Below, one piece after another: positions 2,651 through 35,900 of a stretch of DNA of 64,000 nucleotides. Source of the DNA: Euprymna scolopes (Eukaryota); the NCBI GenBank assembly GCA_053919585.1, contig CM132826.1, one strand, 5' to 3'. The notes below the pieces were generated by a model. That model was not told where the DNA came from, did not search any database, and saw only the letters and a program-made list of their open reading frames with translations. The translations under genes were made by a program, and so were the position numbers. The number at the start of each line of letters is the position of its first letter. Position 1 is the stretch's first letter.

Positions 2651-3015
2651 CTAGCAGGGCTACCCGGCGTTGCTCGGGACCGTATAAACAATGAAAAAAC
2701 AAAAGCAGATATTGAACATATGTTTTATTCTTAGGGGAGAGGAATCTTTCATCTCAAGTTTTAGCGTTACAAACAAACATTTGTCTTTTATATATATAGA
2801 TAATGACAGGTTTTTTTGGGGGCCCCCCTCGAAGATAACTGATCAGTTGACCAACTTCTAGTGGTCCGTTTGACGTGAAATTTCGATATTTGTCATCCGG
2901 GTGATGGGGCTTCGATATGATACCAAATTTGTCAAGTTTGGTTCCGTCTTTCAAAAGTTTTAGCGTTACAAACAAACATACATACACACAGACGTTTGGC
3001 TTTTATATATATAGA
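2651..3015 (-). mobile_element. Short Helitron derivatives of the same family: mini-element 2651-2800 plus a 5'-terminal segment 2802-3015
   Basis: 2651-2755 is near-identical to 3016-3120 (hairpin + CTAG). TC-TATATATATAAAAG 5' ends at 2800 and 3015. 2802-3015 is homologous to 8936-9165. Confidence 0.75.
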
Positions 3016-4539
3016 CTAGCAGGGCTACCCGGCGTTGCTCGGGACCGTATAAACAATGAAAAAACAAAAGCAGATATTGAACATATGTTTGATTCTTAGG
3101 GGAGAGGAATCTTTCATCTCTATGTATTATTTGTTTTATCTACCCTAGGACTGATATTGTTCATGTTTTATCCCTAGCATAGGTAATTTACAGCATGTAT
3201 ATGAAATTGTTTTACCTTAGGGAGAAGAGAACAGGTAATATACAACATAATGTGTCTATATTACATCCCTGGCAACGCCTAGAAACCAGCTAGAACATGT
3301 ATTTCAGTCAATCTTTATTATATCCTGGGCTATGCCGGGAAACCAGCTAATCTCTTTTTAGTGACTTGACCACCAAAATACCTCCCTAAGTGTGTCCTTT
3401 CTTTTGAACTTATTAGATATAGGTATCTAGAAATGTGTGTGAAATTTGTTGAATGCATTGTTCACTATGATTTTCTTATTGTTCTACACAATATCAACTG
3501 TAGCGAAATAACACAGTAAACTTAGTGTAGTGTTAGAATAAAGAGCAAAGGAAAAAATTAGAATCATATTTTGTAATTGCAAATCTAAATTTGCTAGCAT
3601 GTACCAGTATTTGCCAGGTTGTGGAAATTTGGAACTTATAACATATGTAGTGGCCTTTTCCTAGATACCTATTGCTAAAAATTATACTTTCATTTTGTTA
3701 GAAAAATCTCTCTTCAGATGCCCTGCATCATTCAAAATAAAAACAAATATTTTTATAATTGTTTCAGTATATTGCTACACAATGTGAAAGTTTTTAACGT
3801 TTGTAAAAAAAATCATGAATGTGCTTATATTGCAAAAAAGAAAATATCAGTGCACAGTATTGAAAGTGTTTGAGATTCAAAAGTCTGTAACATTTCTACT
3901 AACTTCATAAGATGTCATGTGAGAAACTGAATTGAATATCAAGACATTATCTGAAGCGTTTTTATTTTGGTGTAACATATGTGTTTACAGTGAACCTTAA
4001 CTTTTAATAAACAGATTGGTATGCAATGACATAGGCTAAGAATCTTTAAAATATATATAAATTGGAAAAATGTGTGAACAAATGAAAAAAAAATGATCCG
4101 CTCCACTTGATGACATCAAGCACAGTAATATTTTAGTGAAGAAAATATGAAATTGATGTTCAGTGATTAGTTTGGATGAATGAGAAAATGTAATTGTTTG
4201 ATGCATAAAAATAACTCAGTTGCTGTATTTGATATTAAGCAGCAAAATATAGTGATTTGAATATTTGGGAAAACATCAAACCAGATTATGTAAAAAGAAA
4301 AAAAAAAAGATGAAATTAGAAAATATATATTTTATGTTTATGAGTTCTGCCAATCAAAATTTTGTGGCAGAAATTGGGTGATTACCATGCAATTTTATTT
4401 TGGTAAAATTCTTAAATTATTAGAATGTTTATTATAATTTCTAATTAGTGACTTGTTATAATCAAAATCCGCCCTAAAGAGTGTCCTTTCTTTTATTAGG
4501 TATCAGAGTAGGTATCAAGATTTCTACTTCTATACAAAT

Positions 4540-5193
4540 GTGATATTTCAGATCTGTACATAAAAAATTTGTTGAATATATAGGTTGAGAATTGTTCTGT
4601 GTCGCTCTCTCTCACACACACACGCATTCTCACTTTTATAGATATAATAGATAGATTACTCTAGATATATTTCCATATGTCTGAATACCCTATATACAAA
4701 TTTTCAAATCTGTAGATAAAAAAATTTGTTGAGTATATAGGTTGAAAATTGTTCTCTCTCTCTCTCTCACACACACATTCTCAATTTTAGAGATATAATA
4801 GATAGATTATGCTAGATATATTTCCATATGTCTGAATACCCTATATACAAATTTTCTAATCTGTAGATCAAATATTTGTTGAATATATAGGTTGAAAATT
4901 GTTCTTACTCTCTCTCTCTCTCTCTCTGGCTACCTCACACACACATTCTAACTTTTATAGATATAATAGATAGATTATGCTAGATATATTTCCATATGTG
5001 TGAATACCCTATATACAAATTTTCTAATTTGTAGATAAAAAATTTGTAGAGTGCATAGGTTGAGAATTGTTCTCTCTATCTCTCACACACACATTCTAAC
5101 TTTTAAAGATATAATAGATTATGCTAGATATATTTCGATATTTCTGAATACCCTATATATAAAAATTTGTTGAATGTATAGGTTGAGAACTGT

Positions 5194-5224
<31 letters not shown>

Positions 5225-5361
5225 CACACACACACATTCTCACTTTTATAGATATAATAGAAAGATTATCCTAGATATATTTCTATTTGTATGAATACTC
5301 TATATACAAATTTTAAAATCTGTAGATAAAGAATTTGTTGAGTATATGGGTTGAGAATTGT

Positions 5362-5402
<41 letters not shown>

Positions 5403-6143
5403 TTCTCACTTTTATAGATATAATAGATTATGCTAGATATATTTCCATATGTCTGAATACCCTATATACAAATTTTCAAATCTGTAGATAAAAAATTTGT
5501 TGAGTATATAGGTTGAGAATTGTTCTCTCTCTCTCTATCACACACATTCTCACTTTTATAGATATAATAGACAGATTATGCCAGATATATTGAAATATGT
5601 CTGAATGCCCAATATACAAATTTTGAAATCTGTAGATAAAAAATTTGTTGTATACATAGGTTGACAATTGTCCTCTCTCTCACACACACACACATTCTCA
5701 CTTTTATACATATAATAGATAGATTATGCTAGATATATTTCTATATGTCTGAACACCCTATATACAAATGTTCAAATCTGTGGATAAAAAATTTGTTGAA
5801 TGTATAGGTTGAGAATTTTTATCTCTCTCTTTTTCTCTCTCTCTCTCTCGCTATCTCACACACACGCATTCTCACTTTTATAGATAAAATAGATAGATTA
5901 TGCTAGATATATTTCCATATGTCTGAATACCCTATATACAAAGTTTCAAATCTGTAGATAAAAAATTTGTTGAATATATAGGTTTAGAATTGTTCTCTCT
6001 CTCTCTCTCACACACACATTCTAACTTTTGTAGTTATAATAGATAGATTATGCTAGATATATTTCCATATGTCTGAATACCCTATATACAAATTTTCTAA
6101 ACTGTAGGTAAAAAATTTGTTGAGTATGTAGGTTAAGAATTGT

Positions 6144-6180
<37 letters not shown>

Positions 6181-6684
6181 AGTTCTCACTTTTATAGATA
6201 TAATAGATAGATTATGCTAGATATATTTCTATATGTCTGCCTACCCTATATACAAATTTCCAAATCTGTGCCCAAAAATGTGTGGAATATATAGGTTGAG
6301 AATTGTTCTCTCTCTCTCTCTCTCTCTCTCACACATATTCTCACTTTTATAGGTTATATAGGTTGAGAATTTTTTGCTCTTTCCATCACTCACATTCACA
6401 CTTTTATAGATATAATACATAGATTATGCCAGATATATTTACATATGTCTGAATACCCAATATACACATTTTCAAATCTGTAGATAAAAAATTAGTTGAA
6501 TATATAGGTTGAGAATTGTTCTCTCTCTCTCTCTTTCTCTCTCTCTCACACACACATTCTCACTTTTATAGATATAATAGATAGATTATGCTAGATATAT
6601 TTCCATATGTCTGAATACCCTATATACAAATTTTCTAATCGGTAGATAAAAAATTTGTTGAATATATAGGGTGAGAATTGTACT

Positions 6685-6723
<39 letters not shown>

Positions 6724-7188
6724 GCACACATTCTCACTTTTATGGATATAATAGATAGATTATGCTGGATATATTTCCATATGTCTGAATACCCTATATA
6801 CAAATGGTCAAATCTGTAGATAACAAATTTATTGAATAGATAGGTTGAGAATTGTTCTCTCTCTCTCTCTCGCAACCTTACACACACAACCACACGCAAA
6901 CATTCTGACTTTTATAGATATAATAGATCGATTATGCTAGATATATTTCCATATGTCTGAATACCCAATATACAAATTTTCAAATCTGTAGGTAAAAAAT
7001 TTGTTGAATATATAGGTTGAGAATTGTTCTCTCTCTCTCACACACTCACATTCTCACTTTTATAGATATAATGTATAGATTATGCTAGATATATTTCTAT
7101 ATGTCTGAATACCCTATATACAAAGTTTAAAATCTGTAGATAAAAATACGTTGAGTATATAGGTTGAGAATTGTTCTCTCTCTCTCTT

Positions 7189-7230
<42 letters not shown>

Positions 7231-7354
7231 TTTCACTTTTATAGATATAATAGATAGATTATGCTAGATATATTTCCATATGTCTGAATACCCTATATAC
7301 AAATTTTCAAATCTGTAGATAAAAAATGTATTGAATATATAGGTTGAGAATTGT

Positions 7355-7409
<55 letters not shown>

Positions 7410-7570
7410 CTACCTCACACACACACACATTTTCACTTTTATAGATATAATAGATAGATTATGCTAGATATATTTCCATATGTCTGAATACCCTATATAC
7501 AAACTTTCAAATCTGTAGATAAAAAATTTGTTGAGTATATAGGTTGAGAATTGTTCTCTCTCTCTCACAC
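4540..7570. repeat. Tandem array of ~18 units of ~150-190 bp, each with a (CT)n(CA)n microsatellite, inside the Helitron
   Basis: Recurrent CATATGTCTGAATACCCTATATACAAATTTTCAAATCTGTAGATAAAAAATTTGTTGARTATATAGGTTGAGAATTGTT(CT)n(CA)nTTCTCACTTTTATAGATATAATAGATAGATTATGCTAG. Confidence 0.97.
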
Positions 7571-7659
7571 GAAACTGTGCGCTCGGCTTCTTCCCCCCCT
7601 TCCCACCCCAAATGCTTGGGAAACTGTGCACTGTTTTTGTTGGTTTTCAAGCTGCCTCT

Positions 7660-7975
7660 TCCCCCCCCCCACACACACACACAGTTTAACAGTAGTAGGA
7701 GGTCAAGAGAAAGAGGGTGAGAGAGAGAGAAGAGTAAGTTGGTGAGAGAGAGAGAAAAGAGAAAGAGGGTGTTGGTTTTATATTTTTATTATCGTCTAAT
7801 ATTTTGAAAGCTGAATTTCTAATAAAATGTGCATCTATAGGAGATAATGCCTGGGAATGTGTTCCCCCCCCCCACAGTTTAACAGTGGTGTGACGTCAAG
7901 AGAAAGAGGGTGAGAGAGAGGGAAGAGTAAGTGGGTGAGAGAGAGAAAAAAAAGAAAGACGGTGTTGGTTTTGTG
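7660..7975. repeat. Two diverged direct copies of a C-tract/GA-rich module (~7660-7780 and ~7864-7973)
   Basis: Shared CCCCCCCCC..ACAGTTTAACAGT..GTCAAGAGAAAGAGGGTGAGAGAGAG..AAGAGTAAGT.GGTGAGAGAG..GGTGTTGGTTTT. Confidence 0.85.
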
Positions 7976-7998
7976 AAAAAAGTTGTTATTTACAATTG

Positions 7999-8190
7999 TT
8001 CGCATTCTTGGCCTTTTGGTCAAGATCAAAGTGTAGTATCTGTTCTTCAGATGCTGCACTTCTATTTCTTGTTCTCTTTCGGTGGAGGAGAAATCCGCCA
8101 CGACTGAGACAATTTTTATTTTTGTACCTTTTCTCCACGTTAAAAAACGACCCTGGTGTCTAACTCTGTCCCGTGGGGAGGCATAGTAAA
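7999..8190 (+). ncRNA. U2: U2 snRNA-like sequence (variant or pseudogene); confident core 7999-8047
   Basis: TTCGCATTCTTGGCCTTTTGGTCAAGATCAAAGTGTAGTATCTGTTCTT closely matches the U2 5' end, including the GTAGTA branch-site recognition motif. Downstream are an Sm-like AATTTTTATTTTTG (8111-8124) and CTCCACG..CGACCCTGGT, reminiscent of the U2 3' domain. The 3' extent is uncertain. Confidence 0.75.
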
Positions 8191-8733
8191 TAGGTACAAT
8201 TGTTCGCCATTAGTGGATGTTGACGTCACGTCACGTGACATGACTAAGCGTTTTTTTTTTTTAGTATGAATAACATTTTTTGTTATAATTATAAAGTCTA
8301 CACTTAATTTTATAGAAAATGATGTATATATAATAGAAAAAAAAAATTACTGGTTTTGTTGGATTCAAGTGGATCCCCCCCCCTCCAGTTTAAGAGATAG
8401 CAGGTCACGTGGTAATATACAAAATGGCTAGCGTAAATATAAAGATCGGTTTTTTTATCGACGAATATTTTGAAAGCTGAATTTTTTTTTATTCCTGTAC
8501 ATTTTTTCCTGATATTTTTCGTTAAAACTCTTGTATAAATACTATTTTTAACCAGTTAAATACGTTGGAGACATTGTCATGGAGTTTAATAATCTCTTGA
8601 ACAAAGCAGAAGAGAAATTACAAAAGTATCGGTAAAACAAAGTGTTTGTTTACATTTGTTCGCCATTACTGGATGTTGACGTCACGTCACGTGACATGAC
8701 TAAGCGTTTTTGGATTATGTAATATTAACATTT

Positions 8734-9100
8734 AAATGACAGGTTTTTTGGGGGGCCCCCCTAGGAGAGAAATGATCAGTTCACCCCCTTTTAATGGTCC
8801 GTTTGGTGTGGAATTTCGATATTTGTCATGCGGGTGATCAAGGTTCAATATGATACATAATTTGTCAACTTTGGTTGTGTCTGTCAAAAGTTTGAGCTGA
8901 CGTCACGTCACGTGACACGTATTGAATAACGTTAAAATGACAGGTTTTTTGGGGGGCCCCCCTAGGAGAAAAACGATCAGTTGACCCCTTTCTACTGGTC
9001 CGTTTGACGTGAAATTTCGATATTTGTCATCCGGGTGATCAAGGTGCAATATGATACCAAATTTGTCAACTCTGGTTCCGTCTTTCAAAAGTTTTAGCGT
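8734..9100. repeat. ~200 bp tandem duplication of the Helitron subterminal segment containing the GGGGGGCCCCCC palindrome
   Basis: AAATGACAGGTTTTTTGGGGGGCCCCCCTAGGAGA... at ~8734 and ~8936, with a third copy at ~2802. Confidence 0.9.
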
Positions 9101-9338
9101 TACAAACAAACATACATACATACATACATACATACACACCGATTTTTGCCTTTTATATATATAGATGTTTTACAGTTTTGTATACTATTCAGACGAAATA
9201 TATTTATTTGAAAGACAAAGTTACTTTAAAACGCAAACATTTAGTAACATTTGGTGGTGAGCCGTATGAATTCTTTTGATGGGCCACATACAGATTGTGA
9301 GCAATAGTTTGGCCACACCATGTCTAAACGATGCTTAC

Positions 9339-20900: not shown

Positions 20901-23900
20901 CCGAGAACATTGCTGAAATAACTAAACGAAAAAACAATAACCTTGAATGATTGGAAATTGGGCTTTCTGTATTTTTTTTTAAAGAGAAAATATCCGAGAA
21001 CATTGCTGAAATAACTAAACGAAAAAACAATAACCTTGAATGATTGGAAATTGAGCTTTCTGTATTTTTTTTTAAAGAGAAAATATCCGAGAACATTGCT
21101 GAAATAACTAAACGAAAAAACAATAACCTTGAATGATTGGAAATTGGGCTTTCTGTATTTTTTTTTTAAAAGAGAAAATATCCGAGAACATTGCTGAAAT
21201 AACTAAACGAAAAAACAATAACCTTGAATGATTGGAAATTGGGCTTTCTGTATTTTTTTTAAAAGAGAAAATATCCGAGAACATTGCTGAAATAACTAAA
21301 CGAAAAAACAATAACCTTGAATGATTGGAAATTGAGCTTTCTGTATTTTTTTTTAAAGAGAAAATATCCGAGAACATTGCTGAAATAACTAAACGAAAAA
21401 ACAATAACCTTGAATGATTGGAAATTGGGCTTTCTGTATTTTTTTTTAAAGAGAAAATATCCGAGAACATTGCTGAAATAACTAAACGAAAAAACAATAA
21501 CCTTGAATGATTGGAAATTGGGCTTTCTGTATTTTTTTTTAAAGAGAAAATATCCGAGAACATTGCTGAAATAACTAAACGAAAAAACAATAACCTTGAA
21601 TGATTGGAAATTGAGCTTTCTGTATTTTTTTTTAAAGAGAAAATATCCGAGAACATTGCTGAAATAACTAAACGAAAAAACAATAACCTTGAATGATTGG
21701 AAATTGGGCTTTCTGTATTTTTTTTTTAAAAGAGAAAATATCCGAGAACATTGCTGAAATAACTAAACGAAAAAACAATAACCTTGAATGATTGGAAATT
21801 GGGCTTTCTGTATTTTTTTTAAAAGAGAAAATATCCGAGAACATTGCTTAAATAACTAAACGAAAAAACAATAACCTTGAATGATTGGAAATTGAGCTTT
21901 CTGTATTTTTTTTTAAAGAGAAAATATCCGAGAACATTGCTGAAATAACTAAACGAAAAAACAATAACCTTGAATGATTGGAAATTGGGCTTTCTGTATT
22001 TTTTTTTAAAGAGAAAATATCCGAGAACATTGCTGAAATAACTAAACGAAAAAACAATAACCTTGAATGATTGGAAATTGGGCTTTCTGTATTTTTTTTT
22101 TAAAAGAGAAAATATCCGAGAACATTGCTGAAATAACTAAACGAAAAAACAATAACCTTGAATGATTGGAAATTGGCTTTCTGTATTTTTTTTAAAGAGA
22201 AAATATCCGAGAACATTGCTGAAATAACTAAACGAAAAAACAATAACCTTGAATGATTGGAAATTGAGCTTTCTGTATTTTTTTTTAAAGAGAAAATATC
22301 CGAGAACATTGCTGAAATAACTAAACGAAAAAACAATAACCTTGAATGATTGGAAATTGGGCTTTCTGTATTTTTTTTTAAAGAGAAAATATCCGAGAAC
22401 ATTGCTGAAATAACTAAACGAAAAAACAATAACCTTGAATGATTGAAAATTGGCTTTCTGTATTTTTTTAAAGAGAAAATATCCGAGAACATTGCTGAAA
22501 TAACTAAACGAAAAAACAATAACCTTGAATGATTGGAAATTGGGCTTTCTGTATTTTTTTTTAAAGAGAAAATATCCGAGAACATTGCTGAAATAACTAA
22601 ACGAAAAAACAATAACCTTGAATGATTGGAAATTGAGCTTTCTGTATTTTTTTTTAAAGAGAAAATATCCGAGAACATTGCTGAAATAACTAAACGAAAA
22701 AACAATAACCTTGAATGATTGGAAATTGAGCTTTCTGTATTTTTTTTTAAAGAGAAAATATCCGAGAACATTGCTGAAATAACTAAACGAAAAAACAATA
22801 ACCTTGAATGATTGGAAATTGAGCTTTCTGTATTTTTTTTTAAAGAGAAAATATCCGAGAACATTGCTGAAATAACTAAACGAAAAAACAATAACCTTGA
22901 ATGATTGGAAATTGGGCTTTCTGTATTTTTTTTTAAAGAGAAAATATCCGAGAACATTGCTGAAATAACTAAACGAAAAAACAATAACCTTGAATGATTG
23001 GAAATTGGGCTTTCTGTATTTTTTTTAAAGAGAAAATATCCGAGAACATTGCTGAAATAACTAAACGAAAAAACAATAACCTTGAATGATTGGAAATTGG
23101 GCTTTCTGTATTTTTTTTAAAGAGAAAATATCCGAGAACATTGCTGAAATAACTAAACGAAAAAACAATAACCTTGAATTATTGGAAATTGGGCTTTCTG
23201 TATTTTTTTTTAAAGAGAAAATATCCGAGAACATTGCTGAAATAACTAAACGAAAAAACAATAACCTTGAATGATTGGAAATTGAGCTTTCTGTATTTTT
23301 TTTTAAAGAGAAAATATCCGAGAACATTGCTGAAATAACTAAACGAAAAAACAGTAACCTTGAATGATTGGAAATTGAGCTTTCTGTATTTTTTTTTAAA
23401 GAGAAAATATCCGAGAACATTGCTGAAATAACTAAACGAAAAAACAATAACCTTGAATGATTGGAAATTGGGCTTTCTGTATTTTTTTTTAAAGAGAAAA
23501 TATCCGAGAACATTGCTGAAATAACAAAACGAAAAAACAATAACCTTGAATGATTGGAAATTGGGCTTTCTGTATTTTTTTTAAAGAGAAAATATCCGAG
23601 AACATTGCTGAAATAACTAAACGAAAAAACAATAACCTTGAATGATTGGAAATTGGGCTTTCTGTATTTTTTTTAAAGAGAAAATATCCGAGAACATTGC
23701 TGAAATAACTAAACGAAAAAACAATAACCTTGAATGATTGGAAATTGGGCTTTCTGTATTTTTTTTTAAAGAGAAAATATCCGAGAACATTGCTGAAATA
23801 ACTAAACGAAAAAACAATAACCTTGAATGATTGGAAATTGAGCTTTCTGTATTTTTTTTTAAAGAGAAAATATCCGAGAACATTGCTGAAATAACTAAAC

Positions 23901-26900
23901 GAAAAAACAATAACCTTGAATGATTGGAAATTGAGCTTTCTGTATTTTTTTTAAAGAGAAAATATCCGAGAACATTGCTGAAATAACTAAACGAAAAAAC
24001 AATAACCTTGAATGATTGGAAATTGGGCTTTCTGTATTTTTTTTTTTAAAGAGAAAATATCCGAGAACATTGCTGAAATAACTAAACGAAAAAACAATAA
24101 CCTTGAATGATTGGAAATTGGCTTTCTGTATTTTTTTTAAAGAGAAAATATCCGAGAACATTGCTGAAATAACTAAACGAAAAAACAATAACCTTGAATG
24201 ATTGGAAATTGAGCTTTCTGTATTTTTTTTTAAAGAGAAAATATCCGAGAACATTGCTGAAATAACTAAACGAAAAAACAATAACCTTGAATGATTGGAA
24301 ATTGAGCTTTCTGTATTTTTTTTAAAGAGAAAATATCCGAGAACATTGCTGAAATAACTAAACGAAAAAACAATAACCTTGAATGATTGGAAATTGGCTT
24401 TCTGTATTTTTTTTAAAGAGAAAATATCCGAGAACATTGCTGAAATAACTAAACGAAAAAACAATAACCTTGAATGATTGGAAATTGGGCTTTCTGTATT
24501 TTTTTTTAAAGAGAAAATATCCGAGAACATTGCTGAAATAACTAAACGAAAAAACAATAACCTTGAATGATTGGAAATTGAGCTTTCTGTATTTTTTTTT
24601 AAAGAGAAAATATCCGAGAACATTGCTGAAATAACTAAACGAAAAAACAATAACCTTGAATGATTGGAAATTGAGCTTTCTGTATTTTTTTTTTAAAGAG
24701 AAAATATCCGAGAACATTGCTGAAATAACTAAACGAAAAAACAATAACCTTAAATGATTGGAAATTGAGCTTTCTGTATTTTTTTTTTAAAAGAGAAAAT
24801 ATCCGAGAACATTGCTGAAATAACTAAACGAAAAAACAATAACCTTGAATGATTGGAAATTGAGCTTTCTGTATTTTTTTTTTAAAGAGAAAATATCCGA
24901 GAACATTGCTGAAATAACTAAACGAAAAAACAATAACCTTGAATGATTGGAAATTGAGCTTTCTGTATTTTTTTTAAAAGAGAAAATATCCGAGAACATT
25001 GCTGAAATAACTAAACGAAAAAACAATAACCTTGAATGATTGGAAATTGAGCTTTCTGTATTTTTTTTTACAGAGAAAATATCCGAGAACATTGCTGAAA
25101 TAACTAAACGAAAAAACAATAACCTTGAATGATTGGAAATTGGGCTTTCTGTATTTTTTTTAAAAGAGAAAATATCCGAGAACATTGCTGAAATAACTAA
25201 ACGAAAAAACAATAACCTTGAATGATTGGAAATTGAGCTTTCTGTATTTTTTTTTAAAGAGAAAATATCCGAGAACATTGCTGAAATAACTAAACGAAAA
25301 AACAATAACCTTGAATGATTGGAAATTGGGATTTCTGTATTTTTTTTTAAAGAGAAAATATCCGAGAACATTGCTGAAATAACTAAACGAAAAAACAATA
25401 ACCTTGAATGATTGGAAATTGGGCTTTCTGTATTTTTTTTTAAAGAGAAAATATCCGAGAACATTGCTGAAATAACTAAACGAAAAAACAATAACCTTGA
25501 ATGATTGGAAATTGAGCTTTCTGTATTTTTTTTTAAAGAGAAAATATCCGAGAACATTGCTGAAATAACTAAACGAAAAAACAATAACCTTGAATGATTG
25601 GAAATTGGGCTTTCTGTATTTTTTTTTTAAAAGAGAAAATATCCGAGAACATTGCTGAAATAACTAAACGAAAAAACAATAACCTTGAATGATTGGAAAT
25701 TGGGCTTTCTGTATTTTTTTTAAAAGAGAAAATATCCGAGAACATTGCTTAAATAACTAAACGAAAAAACAATAACCTTGAATGATTGGAAATTGAGCTT
25801 TCTGTATTTTTTTTTAAAGAGAAAATATCCGAGAACATTGCTGAAATAACTAAACGAAAAAACAATAACCTTGAATGATTGGAAATTGGGCTTTCTGTAT
25901 TTTTTTTTAAAGAGAAAATATCCGAGAACATTGCTGAAATAACTAAACGAAAAAACAATAACCTTGAATGATTGGAAATTGGGCTTTCTGTATTTTTTTT
26001 TTAAAAGAGAAAATATCCGAGAACATTGCTGAAATAACTAAACGAAAAAACAATAACCTTGAATGATTGGAAATTGGCTTTCTGTATTTTTTTTAAAGAG
26101 AAAATATCCGAGAACATTGCTGAAATAACTAAACGAAAAAACAATAACCTTGAATGATTGGAAATTGAGCTTTCTGTATTTTTTTTTAAAGAGAAAATAT
26201 CCGAGAACATTGCTGAAATAACTAAACGAAAAAACAATAACCTTGAATGATTGGAAATTGGGCTTTCTGTATTTTTTTTTAAAGAGAAAATATCCGAGAA
26301 CATTGCTGAAATAACTAAACGAAAAAACAATAACCTTGAATGATTGAAAATTGGCTTTCTGTATTTTTTTAAAGAGAAAATATCCGAGAACATTGCTGAA
26401 ATAACTAAACGAAAAAACAATAACCTTGAATGATTGGAAATTGGGCTTTCTGTATTTTTTTTTAAAGAGAAAATATCCGAGAACATTGCTGAAATAACTA
26501 AACGAAAAAACAATAACCTTGAATGATTGGAAATTGAGCTTTCTGTATTTTTTTTTAAAGAGAAAATATCCGAGAACATTGCTGAAATAACTAAACGAAA
26601 AAACAATAACCTTGAATGATTGGAAATTGAGCTTTCTGTATTTTTTTTTAAAGAGAAAATATCCGAGAACATTGCTGAAATAACTAAACGAAAAAACAAT
26701 AACCTTGAATGATTGGAAATTGAGCTTTCTGTATTTTTTTTTAAAGAGAAAATATCCGAGAACATTGCTGAAATAACTAAACGAAAAAACAATAACCTTG
26801 AATGATTGGAAATTGGGCTTTCTGTATTTTTTTTTAAAGAGAAAATATCCGAGAACATTGCTGAAATAACTAAACGAAAAAACAATAACCTTGAATGATT

Positions 26901-29900
26901 GGAAATTGGGCTTTCTGTATTTTTTTTAAAGAGAAAATATCCGAGAACATTGCTGAAATAACTAAACGAAAAAACAATAACCTTGAATGATTGGAAATTG
27001 GGCTTTCTGTATTTTTTTTTAAGAGAAAATATCCGAGAACATTGCTGAAATAACTAAACGAAAAAACAATAACCTTGAATGATTGGAAATTGGGCTTTCT
27101 GTATTTTTTTTTAAAGAGAAAATATCCGAGAACATTGCTGAAATAACTAAACGAAAAAACAATAACCTTGAATGATTGGAAATTGAGCTTTCTGTATTTT
27201 TTTTTAAAGAGAAAATATCCGAGAACATTGCTGAAATAACTAAACGAAAAAACAATTACCTTGAATGATTGGAAATTGAGCTTTCTGTATTTTTTTTTAA
27301 AGAGAAAATATCCGAGAACATTGCTGAAATAACTAAACGAAAAAACAATAACCTTGAATGATTGGAAATTGGGCTTTCTGTATTTTTTTTTAAAGAGAAA
27401 ATATCCGAGAACATTGCTGAAATAACTAAACGAAAAAACAATAACCTTGAATGATTGGAAATTGGGCTTTCTGTATTTTTTTTAAAGAGAAAATATCCGA
27501 GAACATTGCTGAAATAACTAAACGAAAAAACAATAACCTTGAATGATTGGAAATTGGGCTTTCTGTATTTTTTTTAAAGAGAAAATATCCGAGAACATTG
27601 CTGAAATAACTAAACGAAAAAACAATAACCTTGAATGATTGGAAATTGGGCTTTCTGTATTTTTTTTTAAAGAGAAAATATCCGAGAACATTGCTGAAAT
27701 AACTAAACGAAAAAACAATAACCTTGAATGATTGGAAATTGAGCTTTCTGTATTTTTTTTTAAAGAGAAAATATCCGAGAACATTGCTGAAATAACTAAA
27801 CGAAAAAACAATAACCTTGAATGATTGGAAATTGAGCTTTCTGTATTTTTTTTAAAGAGAAAATATCCGAGAACATTGCTGAAATAACTAAACGAAAAAA
27901 CAATAACCTTGAATGATTGGAAATTGGGCTTTCTGTATTTTTTTTTTAAAAGAGAAAATATCCGAGAACATTGCTGAAATAACTAAACGAAAAAACAATA
28001 ACCTTGAATGATTGGAAATTGGCTTTCTGTATTTTTTTTAAAGAGAAAATATCCGAGAACATTGCTGAAATAACTAAACGAAAAAACAATAACCTTGAAT
28101 GATTGGAAATTGAGCTTTCTGTATTTTTTTTTAAAGAGAAAATATCCGAGAACATTGCTGAAATAACTAAACGAAAAAACAATAACCTTGAATGATTGGA
28201 AATTGAGCTTTCTGTATTTTTTTTTAAAGAGAAAATATCCGAGAACATTGCTGAAATAACTAAACGAAAAAACAATAACCTTGAATGATTGGAAATTGGC
28301 TTTCTGTATTTTTTTTAAAGAGAAAATATCCGAGAACATTGCTGAAATAACTAAACGAAAAAACAATAACCTTGAATGATTGGAAATTGGGCTTTCTGTA
28401 TTTTTTTTTAAAGAGAAAATATCCGAGAACATTGCTGAAATAACTAAACGAAAAAACAATAACCTTGAATGATTGGAAATTGAGCTTTCTGTATTTTTTT
28501 TTAAAGAGAAAATATCCGAGAACATTGCTGAAATAACTAAACGAAAAAACAATAACCTTGAATGATTGGAAATTGAGCTTTCTGTATTTTTTTTTAAAAG
28601 AGAAAATATCCGAGAACATTGCTGAAATAACTAAACGAAAAAACAATAACCTTAAATGATTGGAAATTGAGCTTTCTGTATTTTTTTTTAAAAGAGAAAA
28701 TATCCGAGAACATTGCTGAAATAACTAAACGAAAAAACAATAACCTTGAATGATTGGAAATTGAGCTTTCTGTATTTTTTTTTTAAAGAGAAAATATCCG
28801 AGAACATTGCTGAAATAACTAAACGAAAAAACAATAACCTTGAATGATTGGAAATTGAGCTTTCTGTATTTTTTTTAAAAGAGAAAATATCCGAGAACAT
28901 TGCTGAAATAACTAAACGAAAAAACAATAACCTTGAATGATTGGAAATTGAGCTTTCTGTATTTTTTTTTACAGAGAAAATATCCGAGAACATTGCTGAA
29001 ATAACTAAACGAAAAAACAATAACCTTGAATGATTGGAAATTGGCTTTCTGTATTTTTTTTAAAGAGAAAATATCCGAGAACATTGCTGAAATAACTAAA
29101 CGAAAAAACAATAACCTTGAATGATTGGAAATTGGGCTTTCTGTATTTTTTTTTAAAGAGAAAATATCCGAGAACATTGCTGAAATAACTAAACGAAAAA
29201 ACAATAACCTTGAATGATTGGAAATTGGGCTTTCTGTATTTTTTTTTAAAGAGAAAATATCCGAGAACATTGCTGAAATAACTAAACGAAAAAACAATAA
29301 CCTTGAATGATTGGAAATTGGGCTTTCTGTATTTTTTTTTAAAGAGAAAATATCCGAGAACATTGCTGAAATAACTAAACGAAAAAACAATAACCTTGAA
29401 TGATTGGAAATTGAGCTTTCTGTATTTTTTTTTACAGAGAAAATATCCGAGAACATTGCTGAAATAACTAAACGAAAAAACAATAACCTTGAATGATTGG
29501 AAATTGGGCTTTCTGTATTTTTTTTAAAGAGAAAATATCCGAGAACATTGCTGAAATAACTAAACGAAAAAACAATAACCTTGAATGATTGGAAATTGGG
29601 CTTTCTGTATTTTTTTTTAAAGAGAAAATATCCGAGAACATTGCTGAAATAACTAAACGAAAAAACAATAACCTTGAATGATTGGAAATTGGGCTTTCTG
29701 TATTTTTTTTTAAAGAGAAAATATCCGAGAACATTGCTGAAATAACTAAACGAAAAAACAATAACCTTGAATGATTGGAAATTCAGCTTTCTGTATTTTT
29801 TTTAAAAGAGAAAATATCCGAGAACATTGCTGAAATAACTAAACGAAAAAACAATAACCTTGAATGATTGGAAATTCAGCTTTCTGTATTTTTTTTTTAA

Positions 29901-32900
29901 AAGAGAAAATATCCGAGAACATTGCTGAAATAACTAAACGAAAAAACAATAACCTTAAATGATTGGAAATTGAGCTTTCTGTATTTTTTTTTTTAAAGAG
30001 AAAATATCCGAGAACATTGCTGAAATAACTAAACGAAAAAACAATAACCTTGAATGATTGGAAATTGAGCTTTCTGTATTTTTTTTTAAAGAGAAAATAT
30101 CCGAGAACATTGCTGAAATAACTAAACGAAAAAACAATAACCTTGAATGATTGGAAATTGAGCTTTCTGTATTTTTTTTTAAAGAGAAAATATCCGAGAA
30201 CATTGCTGAAATAACTAAACGAAAAAACAATAACCTTGAATGATTGGAAATTGGGCTTTCTGTATTTTTTTTTTAAAAGAGAAAATATCCGAGAACATTG
30301 CTGAAATAACTAAACGAAAAAACAATAACCTTGAATGATTGGAAATTGAGCTTTCTGTATTTTTTTTTAAAGAGAAAATATCCGAGAACATTGCTGAAAT
30401 AACTAAACGAAAAAACAATAACCTTGAATGATTGGAAATTGGGCTTTCTGTATTTTTTTTTTAAAAGAGAAAATATCCGAGAACATTGCTGAAATAACTA
30501 AACGAAAAAACAATAACCTTGAATGATTGGAAATTGAGCTTTCTGTATTTTTTTTTTAAGAGAAAATATCCGAGAACATTGCTGAAATAACTAAACGAAA
30601 AAACAATAACCTTGAATGATTGGAAATTGGGCTTCTGTATTTTTTTTTTAAAAGAGAAAATATCCGAGAACATTGCTGAAATAACTAAACGAAAAAACAA
30701 TAACCTTGAATGATTGGAAATTGAGCTTTCTGTATTTTTTTTTAAAGAGAAAATATCCGAGAACATTGCTGAAATAACTAAACGAAAAAACAATAACCTT
30801 GAATGATTGGAAATTGAGCTTTCTGTATTTTTTTTTTAAAAGAGAAAATATCCGAGAACATTGCTGAAATAACTAAACGAAAAAACAATAACCTTGAATG
30901 ATTGGAAATTGAGCTTTCTGTATTTTTTTTTAAAGAGAAAATATCCGAGAACATTGCTGAAATAACTAAACGAAAAAACAATAACCTTGAATGATTGGAA
31001 ATTGAGCTTTCTGTATTTTTTTTTAAAGAGAAAATATCCGAGAACATTGCTGAAATAACTAAACGAAAAAACAATAACCTTGAATGATTGGAAATTGAGC
31101 TTTCTGTATTTTTTTTTTAAAAGAGAAAATATCCGAGAACATTGCTGAAATAACTAAACGAAAAAACAATAACCTTGAATGATTGGAAATTGAGCTTTCT
31201 GTATTTTTTTTTTAAAAGAGAAAATATCCGAGAACATTGCTGAAATAACTAAACGAAAAAACAATAACCTTGAATGATTGGAAATTGAGCTTTCTGTATT
31301 TTTTTTTAAAGAGTAAATATCCGAGAACATTGCTGAAATAACTAAACGAAAAAACAATAACCTTGAATGATTGGAAATTGAGCTTTCTGTATTTTTTTTT
31401 AAAGAGAAAATATCCGAGAACATTGCTGAAATAACTAAACGAAAAAACAATAACCTTGAATGATTGGAAATTGAGCTTTCTGTATTTTTTTTTTAAAAGA
31501 GAAAATATCCGAGAACATTGCTGAAATAACTAAACGAAAAAACAATAACCTTGAATGATTGGAAATTGAGCTTTCTGTATTTTTTTTTAAAGAGAAAATA
31601 TCCGAGAACATTGCTGAAATAACTAAACGAAAAAACAATAACCTTGAATGATTGGAAATTGAGCTTTCTGTATTTTTTTTTTAAAAGAGAAAATATCCGA
31701 GAACATTGCTGAAATAACTAAACGAAAAAACAATAACCTTGAATGATTGGAAATTGAGCTTTCTGTATTTTTTTTTTAAAAGAGAAAATATCCGAGAACA
31801 TTGCTGAAATAACTAAACGAAAAAACAATAACCTTGAATGATTGGAAATTGAGCTTTCTGTATTTTTTTTTAAAGAGAAAATATCCGAGAACATTGCTGA
31901 AATAACTAAACGAAAAAACAATAACCTTGAATGATTGGAAATTGAGCTTTCTGTATTTTTTTTTAAAGAGAAAATATCCGAGAACATTGCTGAAATAACT
32001 AAACGAAAAAACAATAACCTTGAATGATTGGAAATTGAGCTTTCTGTATTTTTTTTTTAAAAGAGAAAATATCCGAGAACATTGCTGAAATAACTAAACG
32101 AAAAAACAATAACCTTGAATGATTGGAAATTGAGCTTTCTGTATTTTTTTTTAAAGAGAAAATATCCGAGAACATTGCTGAAATAACTAAACGAAAAAAC
32201 AATAACCTTGAATGATTGGAAATTGAGCTTTCTGTATTTTTTTTTTAAAAGAGAAAATATCCGAGAACATTGCTGAAATAACTAAACGAAAAAACAATAA
32301 CCTTGAATGATTGGAAATTGAGCTTTCTGTATTTTTTTTTAAAAGAGAAAATATCCGAGAACATTGCTGAAATAACTTAACGAAAAAACAATAACCTTGA
32401 ATGATTGGAAATTGGGCTTTTTGTATTTTTTTTTTAAAAGAGAAAATATCCGAGAACATTGCTGAAATAACTAAACGAAAAAACAATAACCTTTAATGAT
32501 TGGAAATTGAGCTTTCTGTATTTTTTTTTTAAAAGAGAAAATATCCGAGAACATTGCTGAAATAACTAAACGAAAAAACAATAACCTTGAATGATTGGAA
32601 ATTGAGCTTTCTGTATTTTTTTTTTAAAAGAGAAAATATCCGAGAACATTGCTGAAATAACTAAACGAAAAAACAATAACCTTGAATGATTGGAAATTGA
32701 GCTTTCTGTATTTTTTTTTAAAGAGAAAATATCCGAGAACATTGCTGAAATAACTAAACGAAAAAACAATAACCTTGAATGATTGAAAATTGAGCTTTCT
32801 GTATTTTTTTTTTAAAAGAGAAAATATCCGAGAACATTGCTGAAATAACTAAACGAAAAAACAATAACCTTGAATGATTGGAAATTGAGCTTTCTGTATT

Positions 32901-35900
32901 TTTTTTTTAAAAGAGAAAATATCCGAGAACATTGCTGAAATAACTAAACGAAAAAACAATAACCTTGAATGATTGGAAATTGGGCTTTCTGTATTTTTTT
33001 TTTAAAAGAGAAAATATCCGAGAACATTGCTGAAATAACTAAACGAAAAAACAATAACTTTTAATGATTGGAAATTGAGCTTTCTGTATTTTTTTTTTAA
33101 AAGAGAAAATATCCGAGAACATTGCTGAAATAACTAAACGAAAAAACAATAACCTTGAATGATTGGAAATTGAGCTTTCTGTATTTTTTTTTTAAAAGAG
33201 AAAATATCCGAGAACATTGCTGAAATAACTAAACGAAAAAACAATAACCTTGAATGATTGGAAATTGAGCTTTCTGTATTTTTTTTTAAAGAGAAAATAT
33301 CCGAGAACATTGCTGAAATAACTAAACGAAAAAACAATAACATTGAATGATTGGAAATTGAGCTTTCTGTATTTTTTTTTTAAAAGAGAAAATATCCGAG
33401 AACATTGCTGAAATAACTAAACGAAAAAACAATAACCTTGAATGATTGGAAATTGGGCTTTCTGTATTTTTTTTTTAAAAGAGAAAATATCCGAGAACAT
33501 TGCTGAAATAACTAAACGAAAAAACAATAACCTTGAATGATTGGAAATTTGGCTTTCTGTATTTTTTTTAAAAGAGAAAATATCCGAGAACATTGCTGAA
33601 ATAACTAAACGAAAAAACAATAACCTTGAATGATTGGAAATTGGGCTTTCTGTATTTTTTTTAAAAGAGAAAATATCTGAGAACATTGCTGAAATAACTA
33701 AACGAAAAAACAATTACCTTGAATGATTGGAAACTGAGTTTTCTGTATTTTTTTTAAAGAGAAAATATCCGAGAACATTGCTGAAATAACTAAACGAAAA
33801 AACAATAACCTTGAATGATTGGAAATTGGGCTTTCTGTATTTTTTTTTAAAGAGAAAATATCCGAGAACATTGCTGAAATAACTAAACGAAAAAACAATA
33901 ACCTTGAATGATTGGAAATTGGGCTTTCTGTATTTTTTTTTAAAGAGAAAATATCCGAGAACATTGCTGAAATAACTAAACGAAAAAACAATAACCTTGA
34001 ATGATTGGAAATTTGGCTTTCTGTATTTTTTTTAAAGAGAAAATATCCGAGAACATTGCTGAAATAACTAAACGAGAAAACAATAACCTTGAATGATTGG
34101 AAATTGAGCTTTCTGTATTTTTTTTTAAAGAGAAAATATCCGAGAACATTGCTGAAATAACTAAACGAAAAAACAATAACCTTGAATGATTGGAAATTGA
34201 GCTTTCTGTATTTTTTTTAAAAGAGAAAATATCCGAGAACATTGCTGAAATAACTAAACGAAAAAACAATAACCTTGAATGATTGGAAATTGAGCTTTCT
34301 GTATTTTTTTTAAAAGAGAAAATATCCGAGAACATTGCTGAAATAACTAAACGAAAAAACAATAACCTTGAATGATTGGAAATTGAGCTTTCTGTATTTT
34401 TTTTAAAAGAGAAAATATCCGAGAACATTGCTGAAATAACTAAACGAAAAAACAATTACCTTGAATGATTGGAAATTGAATTTTCCGTATTTTTTTTAAA
34501 GAGAAAATATCCGAGAACATTGCTGAAATAACTAAACGAAAAAACAATAACCTTGAATGATTGGAAATTGGGCTTTCTGTATTTTTTTTAAAAGAGAAAA
34601 TATCCGAGAACATTGCTGAAATAACTAAACGAAAAAACAATAACCTTGAATGATTGGAAATTGGGCTTTCTGTATTTTTTTTTAAAGAGAAAATATCCGA
34701 GAACATTGCTGAAATAACTAAACGAAAAAACAATAACCTTGAATGATTGGAAATTGAGCTTTCTGTATTTTTTTTAAAGAGAAAATATCCGAGAACATTG
34801 CTGAAATAACTAAACGAAAAAACAATAACCTTGAATGATTGGAAATTGAGCTTTCTGTATTTTTTTTAAAGAGAAAATATCCGAAAACATTGCTGAAATA
34901 ACTAAACGAAAAAACAATAACCTTGAATGATTGGAAATTGGGCTTTCTGTATTTTTTTTTAAAGAGAAAATATCCGAGAACATTGCTGAAATAACTAAAC
35001 GAAAAAACAATAACCTTGAATGATTGGAAATTGGGCTTTTTGTATTTTTTTTTTAAAAGAGAAAATATCCGAGAACATTGCTGAAATAACTAAACGAAAA
35101 AACAATAACCTTGAATGATTGGAAATTGGTCTTTCTGTATTTTTTTTTTAAAGAGAAAATATCCGAGAACATTGCTGAAATAACTAAACGAAAAAACAAT
35201 AACCTTGAATGATTGGAAATTGGGCTTTCTGTATTTTTTTTTAAAGAGAAAATATCCGAGAACATTGCTGAAATAACTAAACGAAAAAACAATAACCTTG
35301 AATGATTGGAAATTGGGCTTTCTGTATTTTTTTTTTAAAGAGAAAATATCCGAGAACATTGCTGAAATAACTAAACGCAAAAACAATAACCTTGAATGAT
35401 TGGAAATTGAGCTTTCTGTATTTTTTTTTTAAAGAGAAAATATCCGAGAACATTGCTGAAATAACTAAACGAAAAAACAATAATCTTGAATGATTGGAAA
35501 TTGGCCTTTCTGTATTTTTTTTTAAAAGAGAAAATATCCGAGAACATTGCTGAAATAACTAAACGAAAAAACAATAACCTTGAATGATTGGAAATTGGGC
35601 TTTCTGTATTTTTTTTTTAAAAGAGAAAATATCCGAGAACATTGCTGAAATAACTAAACGAAAAAACAATAACCTTGAATGATTGGAAATTTGGCTTTCT
35701 GTATTTTTTTTAAAAGAGAAAATATCCGAGAACATTGCTGAAATAACTAAACGAAAAAACAATAACCTTGAATGATTGGAAATTTGGCTTTCTGTATTTT
35801 TTTTTAAAAGAGAAAATATCCGAGAACATTGCTGAAATAACTAAACGAAAAAACAATAACCTTGAATGATTGGAAATTGAGCTTTCTGTATTTTTTTTAA

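What the first reader, a model, noticed from the sequence alone, without database searches (positions are those of the whole stretch)
7991..8207. Helitron carries a divergent, roughly U2-length snRNA-like cassette bounded by a 13-bp direct repeat
Seen: a U2 5' domain with intact GTAGTA, then a hairpin GGTGGA/TCCGCC, an Sm-like site and faint U2 3' similarity over ~190 nt. TACAATTGTTCGC flanks both sides (7991-8003 and 8195-8207). A third 'empty' copy, TTTACATTTGTTCGCCATTACTGG (~8649), resembles the U2 5' end, suggesting microhomology-guided capture or a target-site duplication. Inference: a rolling-circle element dispersing a spliceosomal RNA variant, here antisense within an intron.
Basis: partly seen in the sequence, partly recalled or inferred. 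Interest (0 to 1): 0.7.

Follow-up and report, generated by a model that had tools for sequence, protein, structure and literature searches.

The report
U2-headed SINE nested in a Helitron
The U2-like "cassette" is one copy of a very abundant short retroposon (SINE) whose first 47 bases were copied from U2 spliceosomal RNA; it landed once inside a Helitron transposon, making the 13-base repeat, and has since been copied along with that Helitron, so it is a passenger and not a Helitron-made snRNA gene.

Summary
Bases 8004-8194 start with a U2 5' end (GTAGTA intact) and are flanked by an exact 13-bp repeat.

- Only about 47 nt are demonstrably U2. The Rfam score is 47 bits against a cut-off of 46, and the remaining 144 nt match the host's real U2 no better than shuffled sequence.
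- The 191-nt unit is a SINE. Its head/body junction occurs 22,674 times in this 5.9-Gb mollusc genome, with copy-specific target-site duplications, 5' truncations and a fixed tail.
- The 13-bp repeat is that SINE's target-site duplication. The predicted empty site occurs 342 times in sister copies of the carrier, and the filled junction 657 times.
- The carrier does look like a non-autonomous Helitron, on the minus strand: 5' TC, 3' CTAG, A|T flanks and head-to-tail arrays. The SINE lies antisense in it and hitch-hikes.
- The GGTGGA/TCCGCC hairpin depends on a substitution seen only in this copy.
- Nothing shows snRNA function or an intron.

U2-headed SINEs (SINEU) are published only from crocodilians, so the family is notable. 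This scan had already found the same family on other DNA of this genome.

The parts
7991..8003 (+). Left copy of the 13-bp target-site duplication, TACAATTGTTCGC
   Evidence: It is an exact repeat of 8195-8207. A single copy stands at the empty site of sister Helitron copies.
8004..8194 (+). The SINE copy: 191 nt, made of a U2-derived head, a body and a tail
   Evidence: RNA-library contigs pile up only on about 8005-8200, thousands of them with differing flanks. The central 35-mer has 33,719 genome hits and the head/body junction 22,674. Independent copies have their own TSDs and 5' truncations.
8004..8050 (+). U2 snRNA-derived head (about U2 nt 6-48), including stem-loop I (8006-8013 paired with 8018-8025) and the branch-point recognition sequence GTAGTA
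   Evidence: Rfam alignment. Alignment to host U2 genes that score 161-181 bits, including the shared GATCAAAGTG insertion.
8029..8061 (+). 14-bp hairpin in which the first bases of the body (CAGATGCTGCACTT) pair with the U2 branch-point recognition region
   Evidence: The whole element folds at -65.5 kcal/mol, z = -5.0. At least 5 U2-headed families in the genome carry the same antisense arm, CAGAT(G/A)CTGCA.
8084..8099 (+). GGAGGA-GAAA-TCC(G)CC hairpin with a GNRA loop.
   Evidence: The column count over 30 Helitron-borne copies gives 29 T and 1 G at 8097. The family reads TT at 8097-8098 in more than 99% of the contig depth.
8118..8124 (+). ATTTTTG, the 'Sm-like' heptamer inside a double T5 run
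   Evidence: It is present in the sequence and kept in all 30 family copies aligned. Similarity to the U2 Sm region is not above chance. T5 runs would terminate RNA polymerase III (general knowledge).
8182..8194 (+). SINE 3' tail, CATAGTAAATAGG, with no poly-A
   Evidence: The same end is seen in 27 of 30 independent copies.
8195..8207 (+). Right copy of the 13-bp target-site duplication
8631..8711 (+). Paralogous segment of the same Helitron that keeps the uninterrupted site (…TTTACATTTGTTCGCCATTACTGG…)
   Evidence: It aligns across the rebuilt pre-insertion junction with 73 identical bases in 81 columns.
3016..9165 (-). Full unit of the carrier, a non-autonomous Helitron of 6,150 bp. On the minus strand the 5' TC is at 9165-9164 and the 3' CTAG at 3019-3016. 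It contains a ~150-170-bp satellite (4546-7566), a (TACA)n run (9101-9136) and 201-bp modules (8726-9098).
   Evidence: Colinear copies at 96-99% identity, and arrays with a ~7-kb period. All CTAG ends are preceded by A on the plus strand, and 6 of 8 unique flanks after ...TATAGA start with T. Array junctions read CTAG|TC on the minus strand. There are no terminal inverted repeats and no ORF above 88 aa.
2651..3015 (-). Two truncated units of the same Helitron, joined head to tail with the full unit: an internally deleted unit (2651-2800) and a 5'-terminal fragment (2801-3015)
   Evidence: Read directly from the sequence and from the end anchors.

Best explanation
Bases 8004-8194 are a copy of a high-copy SINE of this mollusc genome.

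The SINE consists of:
- a ~47-nt head copied from U2 snRNA;
- a body unrelated to U2, whose first bases fold back on the U2 branch-point recognition sequence;
- a fixed tail, ...AGTAAATAGG.

History of this copy:
1. Shown: a SINE RNA was reverse-transcribed into the sequence ...TTATT|TACAATTGTTCGC|CATTAG... of a non-autonomous Helitron, antisense to it, and duplicated 13 bp of target.
2. Inferred: the step was target-primed reverse transcription by a LINE enzyme.
3. Shown: the Helitron lineage with the insert then multiplied, dispersed and in head-to-tail arrays, to about 650 copies, while about 340 copies keep the empty site. The Helitron spreads the SINE passively.

Origin of the head (inferred, about 50-60% likely): the U2 head is the stretch of U2 upstream of the Keno/Utopia-type LINE target site, at U2 nt 38/39 plus a ~9-bp duplication. 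It would have been carried along from an ancestor that sat in a U2 gene. In other loci of this genome, related units are stacked behind a single U2 head, each separated by ATCTGTTC(C/T).

Nothing indicates that this copy works as an snRNA.

The confidence given (0.88) is for the core claim: a SINE copy with a TSD, nested in a repeat with Helitron-type ends and amplified with it.
For: A dispersed retroposon, not a gene:
- In four RNA libraries only about 8005-8200 attracts thousands of different contigs (5,736 in X5), with unlike AT-rich flanks. The neighbouring Helitron sequence is covered by about one contig.
- Genome counts are 33,719 for the central 35-mer and 22,674 for the head/body junction, each allowing up to 2 mismatches, with 0 hits for the reversed controls.
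- Thirty independent copies show TSDs of 9-20 bp that differ from copy to copy, 5'-truncated copies with TSDs, and a common 3' end.

The 13-bp repeat is a TSD:
- The exact predicted empty site gives 342 hits and the filled left junction 657.
- L039:520-720 is such an empty Helitron copy, aligned on both sides of the site.
- A paralogous uninterrupted site lies in the same unit.

Only the head is U2. The host has proper U2 genes scoring 161-181 bits.

Helitron termini and arrays.

Origin of the head:
- Stacks of units separated by ATCTGTTC(C/T) behind one full head, with different numbers and kinds of units from locus to locus.
- Keno and Utopia share one insertion site in U2, with downstream U2 starting at nt 39 and junction motifs TGTAGTATCTG and TCTGTTCTT (PMC4640811).
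- Crocodilian Tx1 LINEs share U1/U2-derived 5' ends with SINEU (PMC4758252 citing Kojima 2015).
Against: - The partner LINE was not found.
- How the SINE is transcribed is unknown. U2 has no internal promoter (PMC4494074), and the T5 runs argue against polymerase III.
- The Helitron call rests on termini and arrays only. The 3' hairpin is weak (-5.5 kcal/mol, z = -0.4), and neither RepHel nor an autonomous partner with the same ends was found.
- The TSDs of dispersed copies begin with TAC or AAC and do not look like the U2 site. The enzyme that moved this family therefore need not be U2-specific.
Confidence: 0.88

Rival explanations
1. One reading: the Helitron captured a U2 variant gene at the DNA level (microhomology-guided gene capture), and rolling-circle transposition is what disperses it.
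For: About 650 Helitron copies do carry it. TCGC at the end of the left repeat happens to continue the U2 5' end, and Rfam starts its match at 7999.
Against: - The same 191-nt unit occurs more than 22,000 times outside this Helitron context, with its own TSDs. Helitron-borne copies are about 3% of them.
- The insert is bounded by a clean 13-bp duplication of a site that exists uninterrupted in 342 sister copies.
- TCGC is already present in the empty site, so it comes from the target and not from U2.
- No U2 flanks came along. The 3' box ...AAAAACAGAC... seen after the host U2 genes is absent here.
Confidence: 0.03
2. A working variant snRNA, or an snRNA-like regulatory RNA such as a U2 decoy or a splicing modulator, encoded by the cassette.
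For: - The U2 stem-loop I and GUAGUA are intact, and an AUUUUUG heptamer is present.
- The fold is strong (z = -5.0).
- The sequence is abundant in RNA libraries.
Against: - The body is not U2-like above chance.
- The U2 stem-loops IIa, III and IV are absent.
- The branch-point recognition sequence is locked in a 14-bp hairpin.
- No shared upstream element or 3' box with the host U2 genes was visible by eye.
- RNA contigs run from Helitron sequence across the 5' junction (7793-8033 and 7793-8046), so this copy is seen as part of longer molecules.
- The library contigs cannot show transcript ends and may include DNA.
Confidence: 0.04
3. The SINE reading is right, but the carrier is not a Helitron. 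It would be a complex satellite or a segmentally duplicated block.
For: There is no RepHel, no significant 3' hairpin and a large internal satellite. Many copies lie in tandem arrays.
Against: - TC...CTAG ends are seen in every copy.
- A|T flanks are seen at independent sites on many chromosomes.
- The CTAG|TC junctions are those typical of Helitron read-through arrays, and there are no TSDs or TIRs.
- The genome teems with Helitrons: 6,421 Helitron_like_N candidates, many with open frames of 1,486-1,603 aa.
Confidence: 0.1

Closest known systems
SINEU: SINEs with U1/U2 snRNA-derived heads in crocodilians (Kojima 2015, PMC4494074)
   Same: - A short non-coding retroposon whose 5' head is copied from U2 snRNA.
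- No internal polymerase III promoter, and oligo-T runs inside.
- High copy number, TSDs and 5' truncation.
- Frequent nesting inside a DNA transposon. Kojima also had to rule out hitch-hiking on Mariner-N4_AMi.
   Different: - The host is a mollusc, and the origin is independent: the head carries the host lineage's own GATCAAAGTG variant.
- The body starts with an inverted copy of the U2 target region, which forms a hairpin.
- The partner LINE was not identified here, whereas it is Tx1-Mar in crocodilians.
- Sequence homology to the crocodilian families was not tested.
Keno (Tx1 clade) and Utopia (NeSL clade), the LINEs that target U2 snRNA genes (PMC4640811)
   Same: Their shared insertion site lies in GTGTAGTATCTGTTCTT, with downstream U2 starting at nt 39. 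The SINE head ends just after that site. Stacked units in this genome are separated by ATCTGTTC(C/T), as expected for insertions at that site with a ~9-bp TSD.
   Different: This copy sits in a target that is not U2, so the enzyme that moved it was not strictly U2-specific.
Non-autonomous Helitrons that form head-to-tail arrays and carry passenger sequence
   Same: 5' TC, 3' CTAG, insertion between A and T without a TSD, read-through tandem copies, internal satellite and microsatellite.
   Different: The passenger was not captured by the Helitron's own mechanism. It retroposed into the Helitron. The 3' hairpin is weak and no autonomous partner was identified.
R2 elements co-transcribed with 28S rRNA. 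The comparison is by analogy only and comes from my own knowledge, not from a test here.
   Same: A site-specific LINE whose RNA can keep upstream target sequence at its 5' end.
   Different: No ribozyme or co-transcription was shown here.

Membership tests
U2 spliceosomal RNA (Rfam RF00004) | A covariance-model match over the whole RNA (stem-loops I, IIa/IIb, III, IV) | tested here: not met
   The score is 47.0 bits against a gathering score of 46. Only model positions 1-48 and a U-run align, and about 100 model positions are skipped. Host U2 genes score 161-181 bits.
U2 spliceosomal RNA (Rfam RF00004) | A 3' half homologous to U2, including a true Sm site | tested here: not met
   The local alignment score of 8051-8194 against the host U2 3' parts is reached by 805 and by 159 of 1000 shuffles. 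The ATTTTTG heptamer is present but is not significant on its own.
U2 spliceosomal RNA (Rfam RF00004) | snRNA gene signals: an upstream proximal element and a downstream 3' box | tested here: not met
   The host U2 genes are followed by ...AAAAACAGAC...; the cassette is followed by the TSD and Helitron sequence. No shared upstream motif was visible (comparison by eye only).
SINE (LINE-dependent short retroposon) | Short, non-coding, high copy number and dispersed | tested here: met
   191 nt. 22,674 to 33,719 genome hits on both strands equally, with controls at 0. Thousands of distinct RNA-library contexts.
SINE (LINE-dependent short retroposon) | Copy-specific target-site duplications and 5' truncations | tested here: met
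   TSDs of 9-20 bp differ between copies, and truncated copies keep the tail and a TSD. Here the TSD is 13 bp, with 342 empty sites.
SINE (LINE-dependent short retroposon) | A 3' tail shared with a partner LINE | not tested
   No LINE with this tail occurs in the roughly 400 kb held.
SINEU (snRNA-headed SINEs) | A head derived from U1 or U2 snRNA that is part of the retroposed unit | tested here: met
   The head equals U2 nt ~6-48 with the host-specific extra A. The head is present in copies inserted at targets that are not U2, each with its own TSD.
SINEU (snRNA-headed SINEs) | Common descent with the crocodilian SINEU-1, -2 and -3 families | not tested
Independent origin is likely, because the head carries this host's own U2 variant.
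Helitron (canonical, Helitron1-type) | 5' TC and 3' CTRR termini | tested here: met
   On the minus strand the unit reads TCTATATATA... at its start and ...GCCCTGCTAG at its end, in every copy examined.
Helitron (canonical, Helitron1-type) | Insertion between A and T, without TSD or TIR | tested here: met
   All 26 CTAG ends are followed by T on the minus strand; two of them have unique flanks. Six of 8 unique 5' flanks give A|TC, and the other two fit a TCTTC... start. No terminal inverted repeats.
Helitron (canonical, Helitron1-type) | A hairpin about 10 nt upstream of the 3' end | tested here: inconclusive
   Only short stems (CCCG...CGGG and GGG.TAG.CCC), -5.5 kcal/mol, z = -0.44.
Helitron (canonical, Helitron1-type) | A RepHel protein, in this copy or in an autonomous partner with the same ends | tested here: not met
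   No ORF above 88 aa in the unit. Neither blastn nor tblastx finds a match between the window and 12 RepHel loci. A partner was not sought further, so the unit is non-autonomous at best.

The most novel reading that the evidence does not exclude
The 47-nt U2 head would be a working module rather than dead baggage. It would serve as a portable landing pad for U2-homing LINEs and SINEs, so that every SINE copy, including the ~650 spread by this Helitron, seeds new insertion sites. Alternatively or in addition, the head-plus-hairpin RNA, abundant in transcripts, would bind U2 partners or Sm proteins and affect splicing.
Probability: 0.15. Interest if true: 0.75.

Novelty: new member of a known kind. 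Interest (0 to 1): 0.4.

Why it matters
On its own this locus is an ordinary nested transposon: a SINE inside a Helitron. It is useful for three reasons.
- It gives a clean, countable natural experiment, with about 340 empty and about 650 filled sister copies. This proves that the U2-headed unit moves as an RNA with its head attached, into DNA that is not U2.
- It shows how a rolling-circle element can multiply a retroposon several hundred-fold.
- It belongs to a SINE family with more than 22,000 copies whose head is U2 snRNA. In the literature I could search, that type is described only from crocodilians.

How such promoter-less heads arise and are transcribed is still open, and this genome looks like a good place to settle it.

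Tried and rejected
- Searching the whole genome with the Rfam U2 model failed twice. I replaced it by a 42-nt U2 pattern and a DNA search with the U2 gene found, then ran Rfam on the fetched loci.
For the same reason no LINE could be fetched.
- Looking for the SINE tail without the SINE body, as a sign of the partner LINE, found none among 27 tails in all DNA held.
- Comparing divergence of the SINE with that of its Helitron flanks among 30 copies was dropped as evidence of selection. The copies had been picked by similarity to the SINE itself, and the right flank is misaligned in loci with a 1.2-kb internal tandem duplication.
- Treating the SINE body as a diverged U2 3' half was rejected by the shuffle test.
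- Reading the carrier on the plus strand gave no Helitron ends. Read on the minus strand it does.
- The resemblance of the Helitron target (TTGTTCGCCATTAG) to U2 TCTGTTCTTATCAG, about 10 of 15 by eye, was not pursued. Other TSDs of the family show no such motif.
- The literature searches found no mollusc U2-headed SINE and no Helitron-borne snRNA of this kind. Repbase and subscription journals were not searchable.

Full report
**What is at 7991-8207.**
The sequence reads TACAATTGTTCGC, then 191 nt, then TACAATTGTTCGC. Rfam finds one family in the whole window: U2 at 7999-8132, with 47.0 bits against a gathering score of 46. In that alignment only model positions 1-48 and a U-run are matched.

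**The host's real U2.**
- The window comes from a 5.9-Gb assembly.
- Run labels call the organism a mollusc. Taking it for a cephalopod, from genome size and at least 46 large contigs, is my inference only.
- The genome has proper U2 genes: dispersed copies scoring 180.9 bits, a 764-bp tandem array on contig 9 scoring 161.3 bits, and older variants.
- These genes share with the cassette the unusual GATCAAAGTG (one extra A), so the cassette's head was copied from this lineage's own U2.
- Beyond the head there is no demonstrable U2 homology. A local alignment of 8051-8194 against the 3' 146-149 nt of two host U2 genes finds only ATTTTTG or TTCTCCACG. Its score is reached by 805 and by 159 of 1000 dinucleotide shuffles.
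- The host genes are followed by a 3' box-like ...AAAAACAGAC..., which the cassette lacks.

**The cassette is a SINE.**
- A first genome search gave 40 scored hits out of 584 candidates, all 99-100% identical. All of them also had identical flanks, including both 13-bp repeats. Those copies therefore belong to one larger repeat.
- Contigs of four RNA libraries then changed the picture. The neighbouring sequence is covered by about one contig per run. Positions about 8005-8200 are hit by thousands of contigs (5,736 in X5 and 2,153 in X15) of graded similarity, which run on into unlike, AT-rich flanks at 8005-8008 and 8197-8200.
- A 35-mer from the middle, written with the majority letters TT at 8097-8098, has 33,719 genome hits with up to 2 mismatches. 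The 39-mer across the U2-head/body junction has 22,674. Both are split evenly between strands, and the reversed controls give 0.
- Thirty copies from contig 1 show the marks of LINE-driven retroposition:
  - a common 3' end, ...CATAGTAAATAGG;
  - flanking duplications of 9-20 bp that differ from copy to copy, for example TACAATAAAGGGGTT, TACACTATAAGAAC and AACTTGAATGTTATTAGTTT, and that mostly begin with TAC or AAC;
  - 5'-truncated copies that still have duplications.
- Full-length copies begin at about U2 nt 6-9. The TCGC that seems to extend the U2 match in the window belongs to the target.

**The 13-bp repeat is this SINE's target-site duplication.**
- The predicted empty site, GTTGTTATTTACAATTGTTCGCCATTAGTGGATGTTGACG, occurs 342 times with up to 3 mismatches, at least 71 of them exact. 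The filled left junction occurs 657 times. Controls give 0.
- One empty copy is in hand. L039:520-720 aligns to window 7862-8006 and 8195-9160 with a single copy of the 13-mer.
It spans the rebuilt junction with 73 identical bases in 81 columns.
- RNA-library contigs that join 8632 or 8580 back to 8195/8196 fit such empty or variant forms.

**The carrier.**
- The repeat unit runs from 3016 to 9165. Other copies are 96-99% identical and often stand in arrays with a ~7-kb period. The difference in length comes from the internal ~150-170-bp satellite.
- On the plus strand the ends look meaningless. On the minus strand the unit starts TCTATATATA... and ends ...CCGGGTAGCCCTGCTAG.
- Every CTAG is followed by T. 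Six of eight unique 5' flanks give A|TC. Array junctions read CTAG|TC.
- There are no terminal inverted repeats, no duplication of the flanks and no ORF above 88 aa.
- These are the defining ends and target of a canonical Helitron, and here it is non-autonomous.
- Two weak points remain. The 3' hairpin is not significant. No RepHel is in the window, although the genome has 6,421 Helitron_like_N candidates, many with open frames of about 1,500-1,600 aa.
- Two truncated units (2651-2800 and 2801-3015) are joined head to tail to the full one.
- The SINE lies on the plus strand, so it is antisense to the Helitron.

**Details of this copy.**
- The RNA fold is strong (-65.5 kcal/mol, z = -5.0). It comprises U2 stem-loop I, a 14-bp hairpin in which the start of the body (CAGATGCTGCACTT) pairs with AGTGTAGTATCTGT, a GNRA-looped hairpin, and a long 3' stem.
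- The antisense arm CAGAT(G/A)CTGCA follows the U2 head in at least five different families of the genome, so it is a family feature.
The 29 other Helitron-borne copies fetched have T at 8097, which gives a perfect GGAGGA-GAAA-TCCTCC. The wider family has TCCTTC.

**Where the head may come from (inference).**
- Keno and Utopia LINEs insert at one site of U2, with downstream U2 starting at nt 39. The motifs TGTAGTATCTG and TCTGTTCTT are seen at their weaker junctions (PMC4640811).
- In ten loci where other sequence precedes the family's body, I find one full U2 head followed by one to several different units. Each unit ends ...AAATAAATACC and is separated from the next by ATCTGTTC(C/T). The number and kind of units differ from locus to locus.
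- That is what repeated insertion at U2 nt 38/39 with a ~9-bp duplication would give. It places the end of the head exactly at the end of that duplication.
- Earlier notes of this scan proposed the same reading. I reached the SINE reading before opening them. I tested the stacking only in part and the LINEs not at all.

**Expression and context.**
- RNA-library contigs cross the left Helitron/SINE junction (7793-8033 and 7793-8046). This copy is therefore seen inside longer molecules.
- Contigs cannot show ends or strand, and DNA carry-over is possible.
- I found no support for 'within an intron'. From 12,000 to 64,000 the window is a 93-bp satellite, and there is no protein-like ORF elsewhere.

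**Literature.**
- SINEs with U1/U2 heads (SINEU) were reported only from crocodilians, with no internal promoter and internal oligo-T runs. Kojima explicitly discusses hitch-hiking on a DNA transposon (PMC4494074).
- Searches for later reports in molluscs found none. Repbase and subscription journals were not searchable.
- This scan has already reported the same family from other pieces of this genome.

**Verdict.**
The snRNA-gene and Helitron-capture reading is rejected. The locus is a U2-headed SINE with a 13-bp TSD, nested antisense in a non-autonomous Helitron and amplified with it.

Noticed in passing
window 12000-64000: A very regular 93-bp (or 188-bp) satellite with about 97% matches fills the rest of the window. 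All long 'ORFs' of the window are read from it.
   Followed up: partly
L049-L072 (contig 1 loci), alignment: Head-to-tail stacks of different short units lie behind one full U2 head. Each unit is separated from the next by ATCTGTTC(C/T), which is U2 nt ~39-47. The number and type of units vary from locus to locus, which suggests repeated site-specific insertion into the SINE's U2 head.
   Followed up: partly
L041, L042, L031, L033, L043 (dispersed U2 genes): Dispersed U2 copies with unrelated upstream flanks share about 40 nt of downstream sequence (CA(C/A)(C/T)AGGGAAACAAA...AAAAACAGACT), including a 3' box-like motif. They may be DNA-level duplicates or retrocopies of 3'-extended precursors.
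   Followed up: no
G000:C9:168867155-168891007 (L040): A GC-rich tandem array of U2 genes with a 764-bp period, with at least 21 units among the listed hits. It is probably the main U2 locus.
   Followed up: partly
L037 (G000:C3:91560000-91569999) and L022-L025: In one Helitron array a 1.19-kb internal segment (window 7094-8288), including the SINE, is itself tandemly repeated at least four times.
   Followed up: partly
window 8216-8245, 8678-8705, 8899-8917: The palindrome-rich motif TGACGTCACGTCACGTGACA (overlapping CRE-like and E-box-like cores) recurs three times in the Helitron, next to poly-C/poly-G tracts and a GGGGGGCCCCCC palindrome (8751-8762, 8952-8963).
   Followed up: no
window 4546-7566: The Helitron carries an internal ~150-170-bp satellite with (TC)n and (CA)n junctions. 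Its copy number explains the length differences (6.15 kb against ~7 kb) between Helitron copies.
   Followed up: partly
Read-laying runs X19 and X20 ('organism B'): Contigs labelled as another organism match the Helitron/SINE junction and the Helitron flank with 0-1 differences. Either that label is a very close relative or the same species, or the Helitron with its insert is shared between the two.
   Followed up: no
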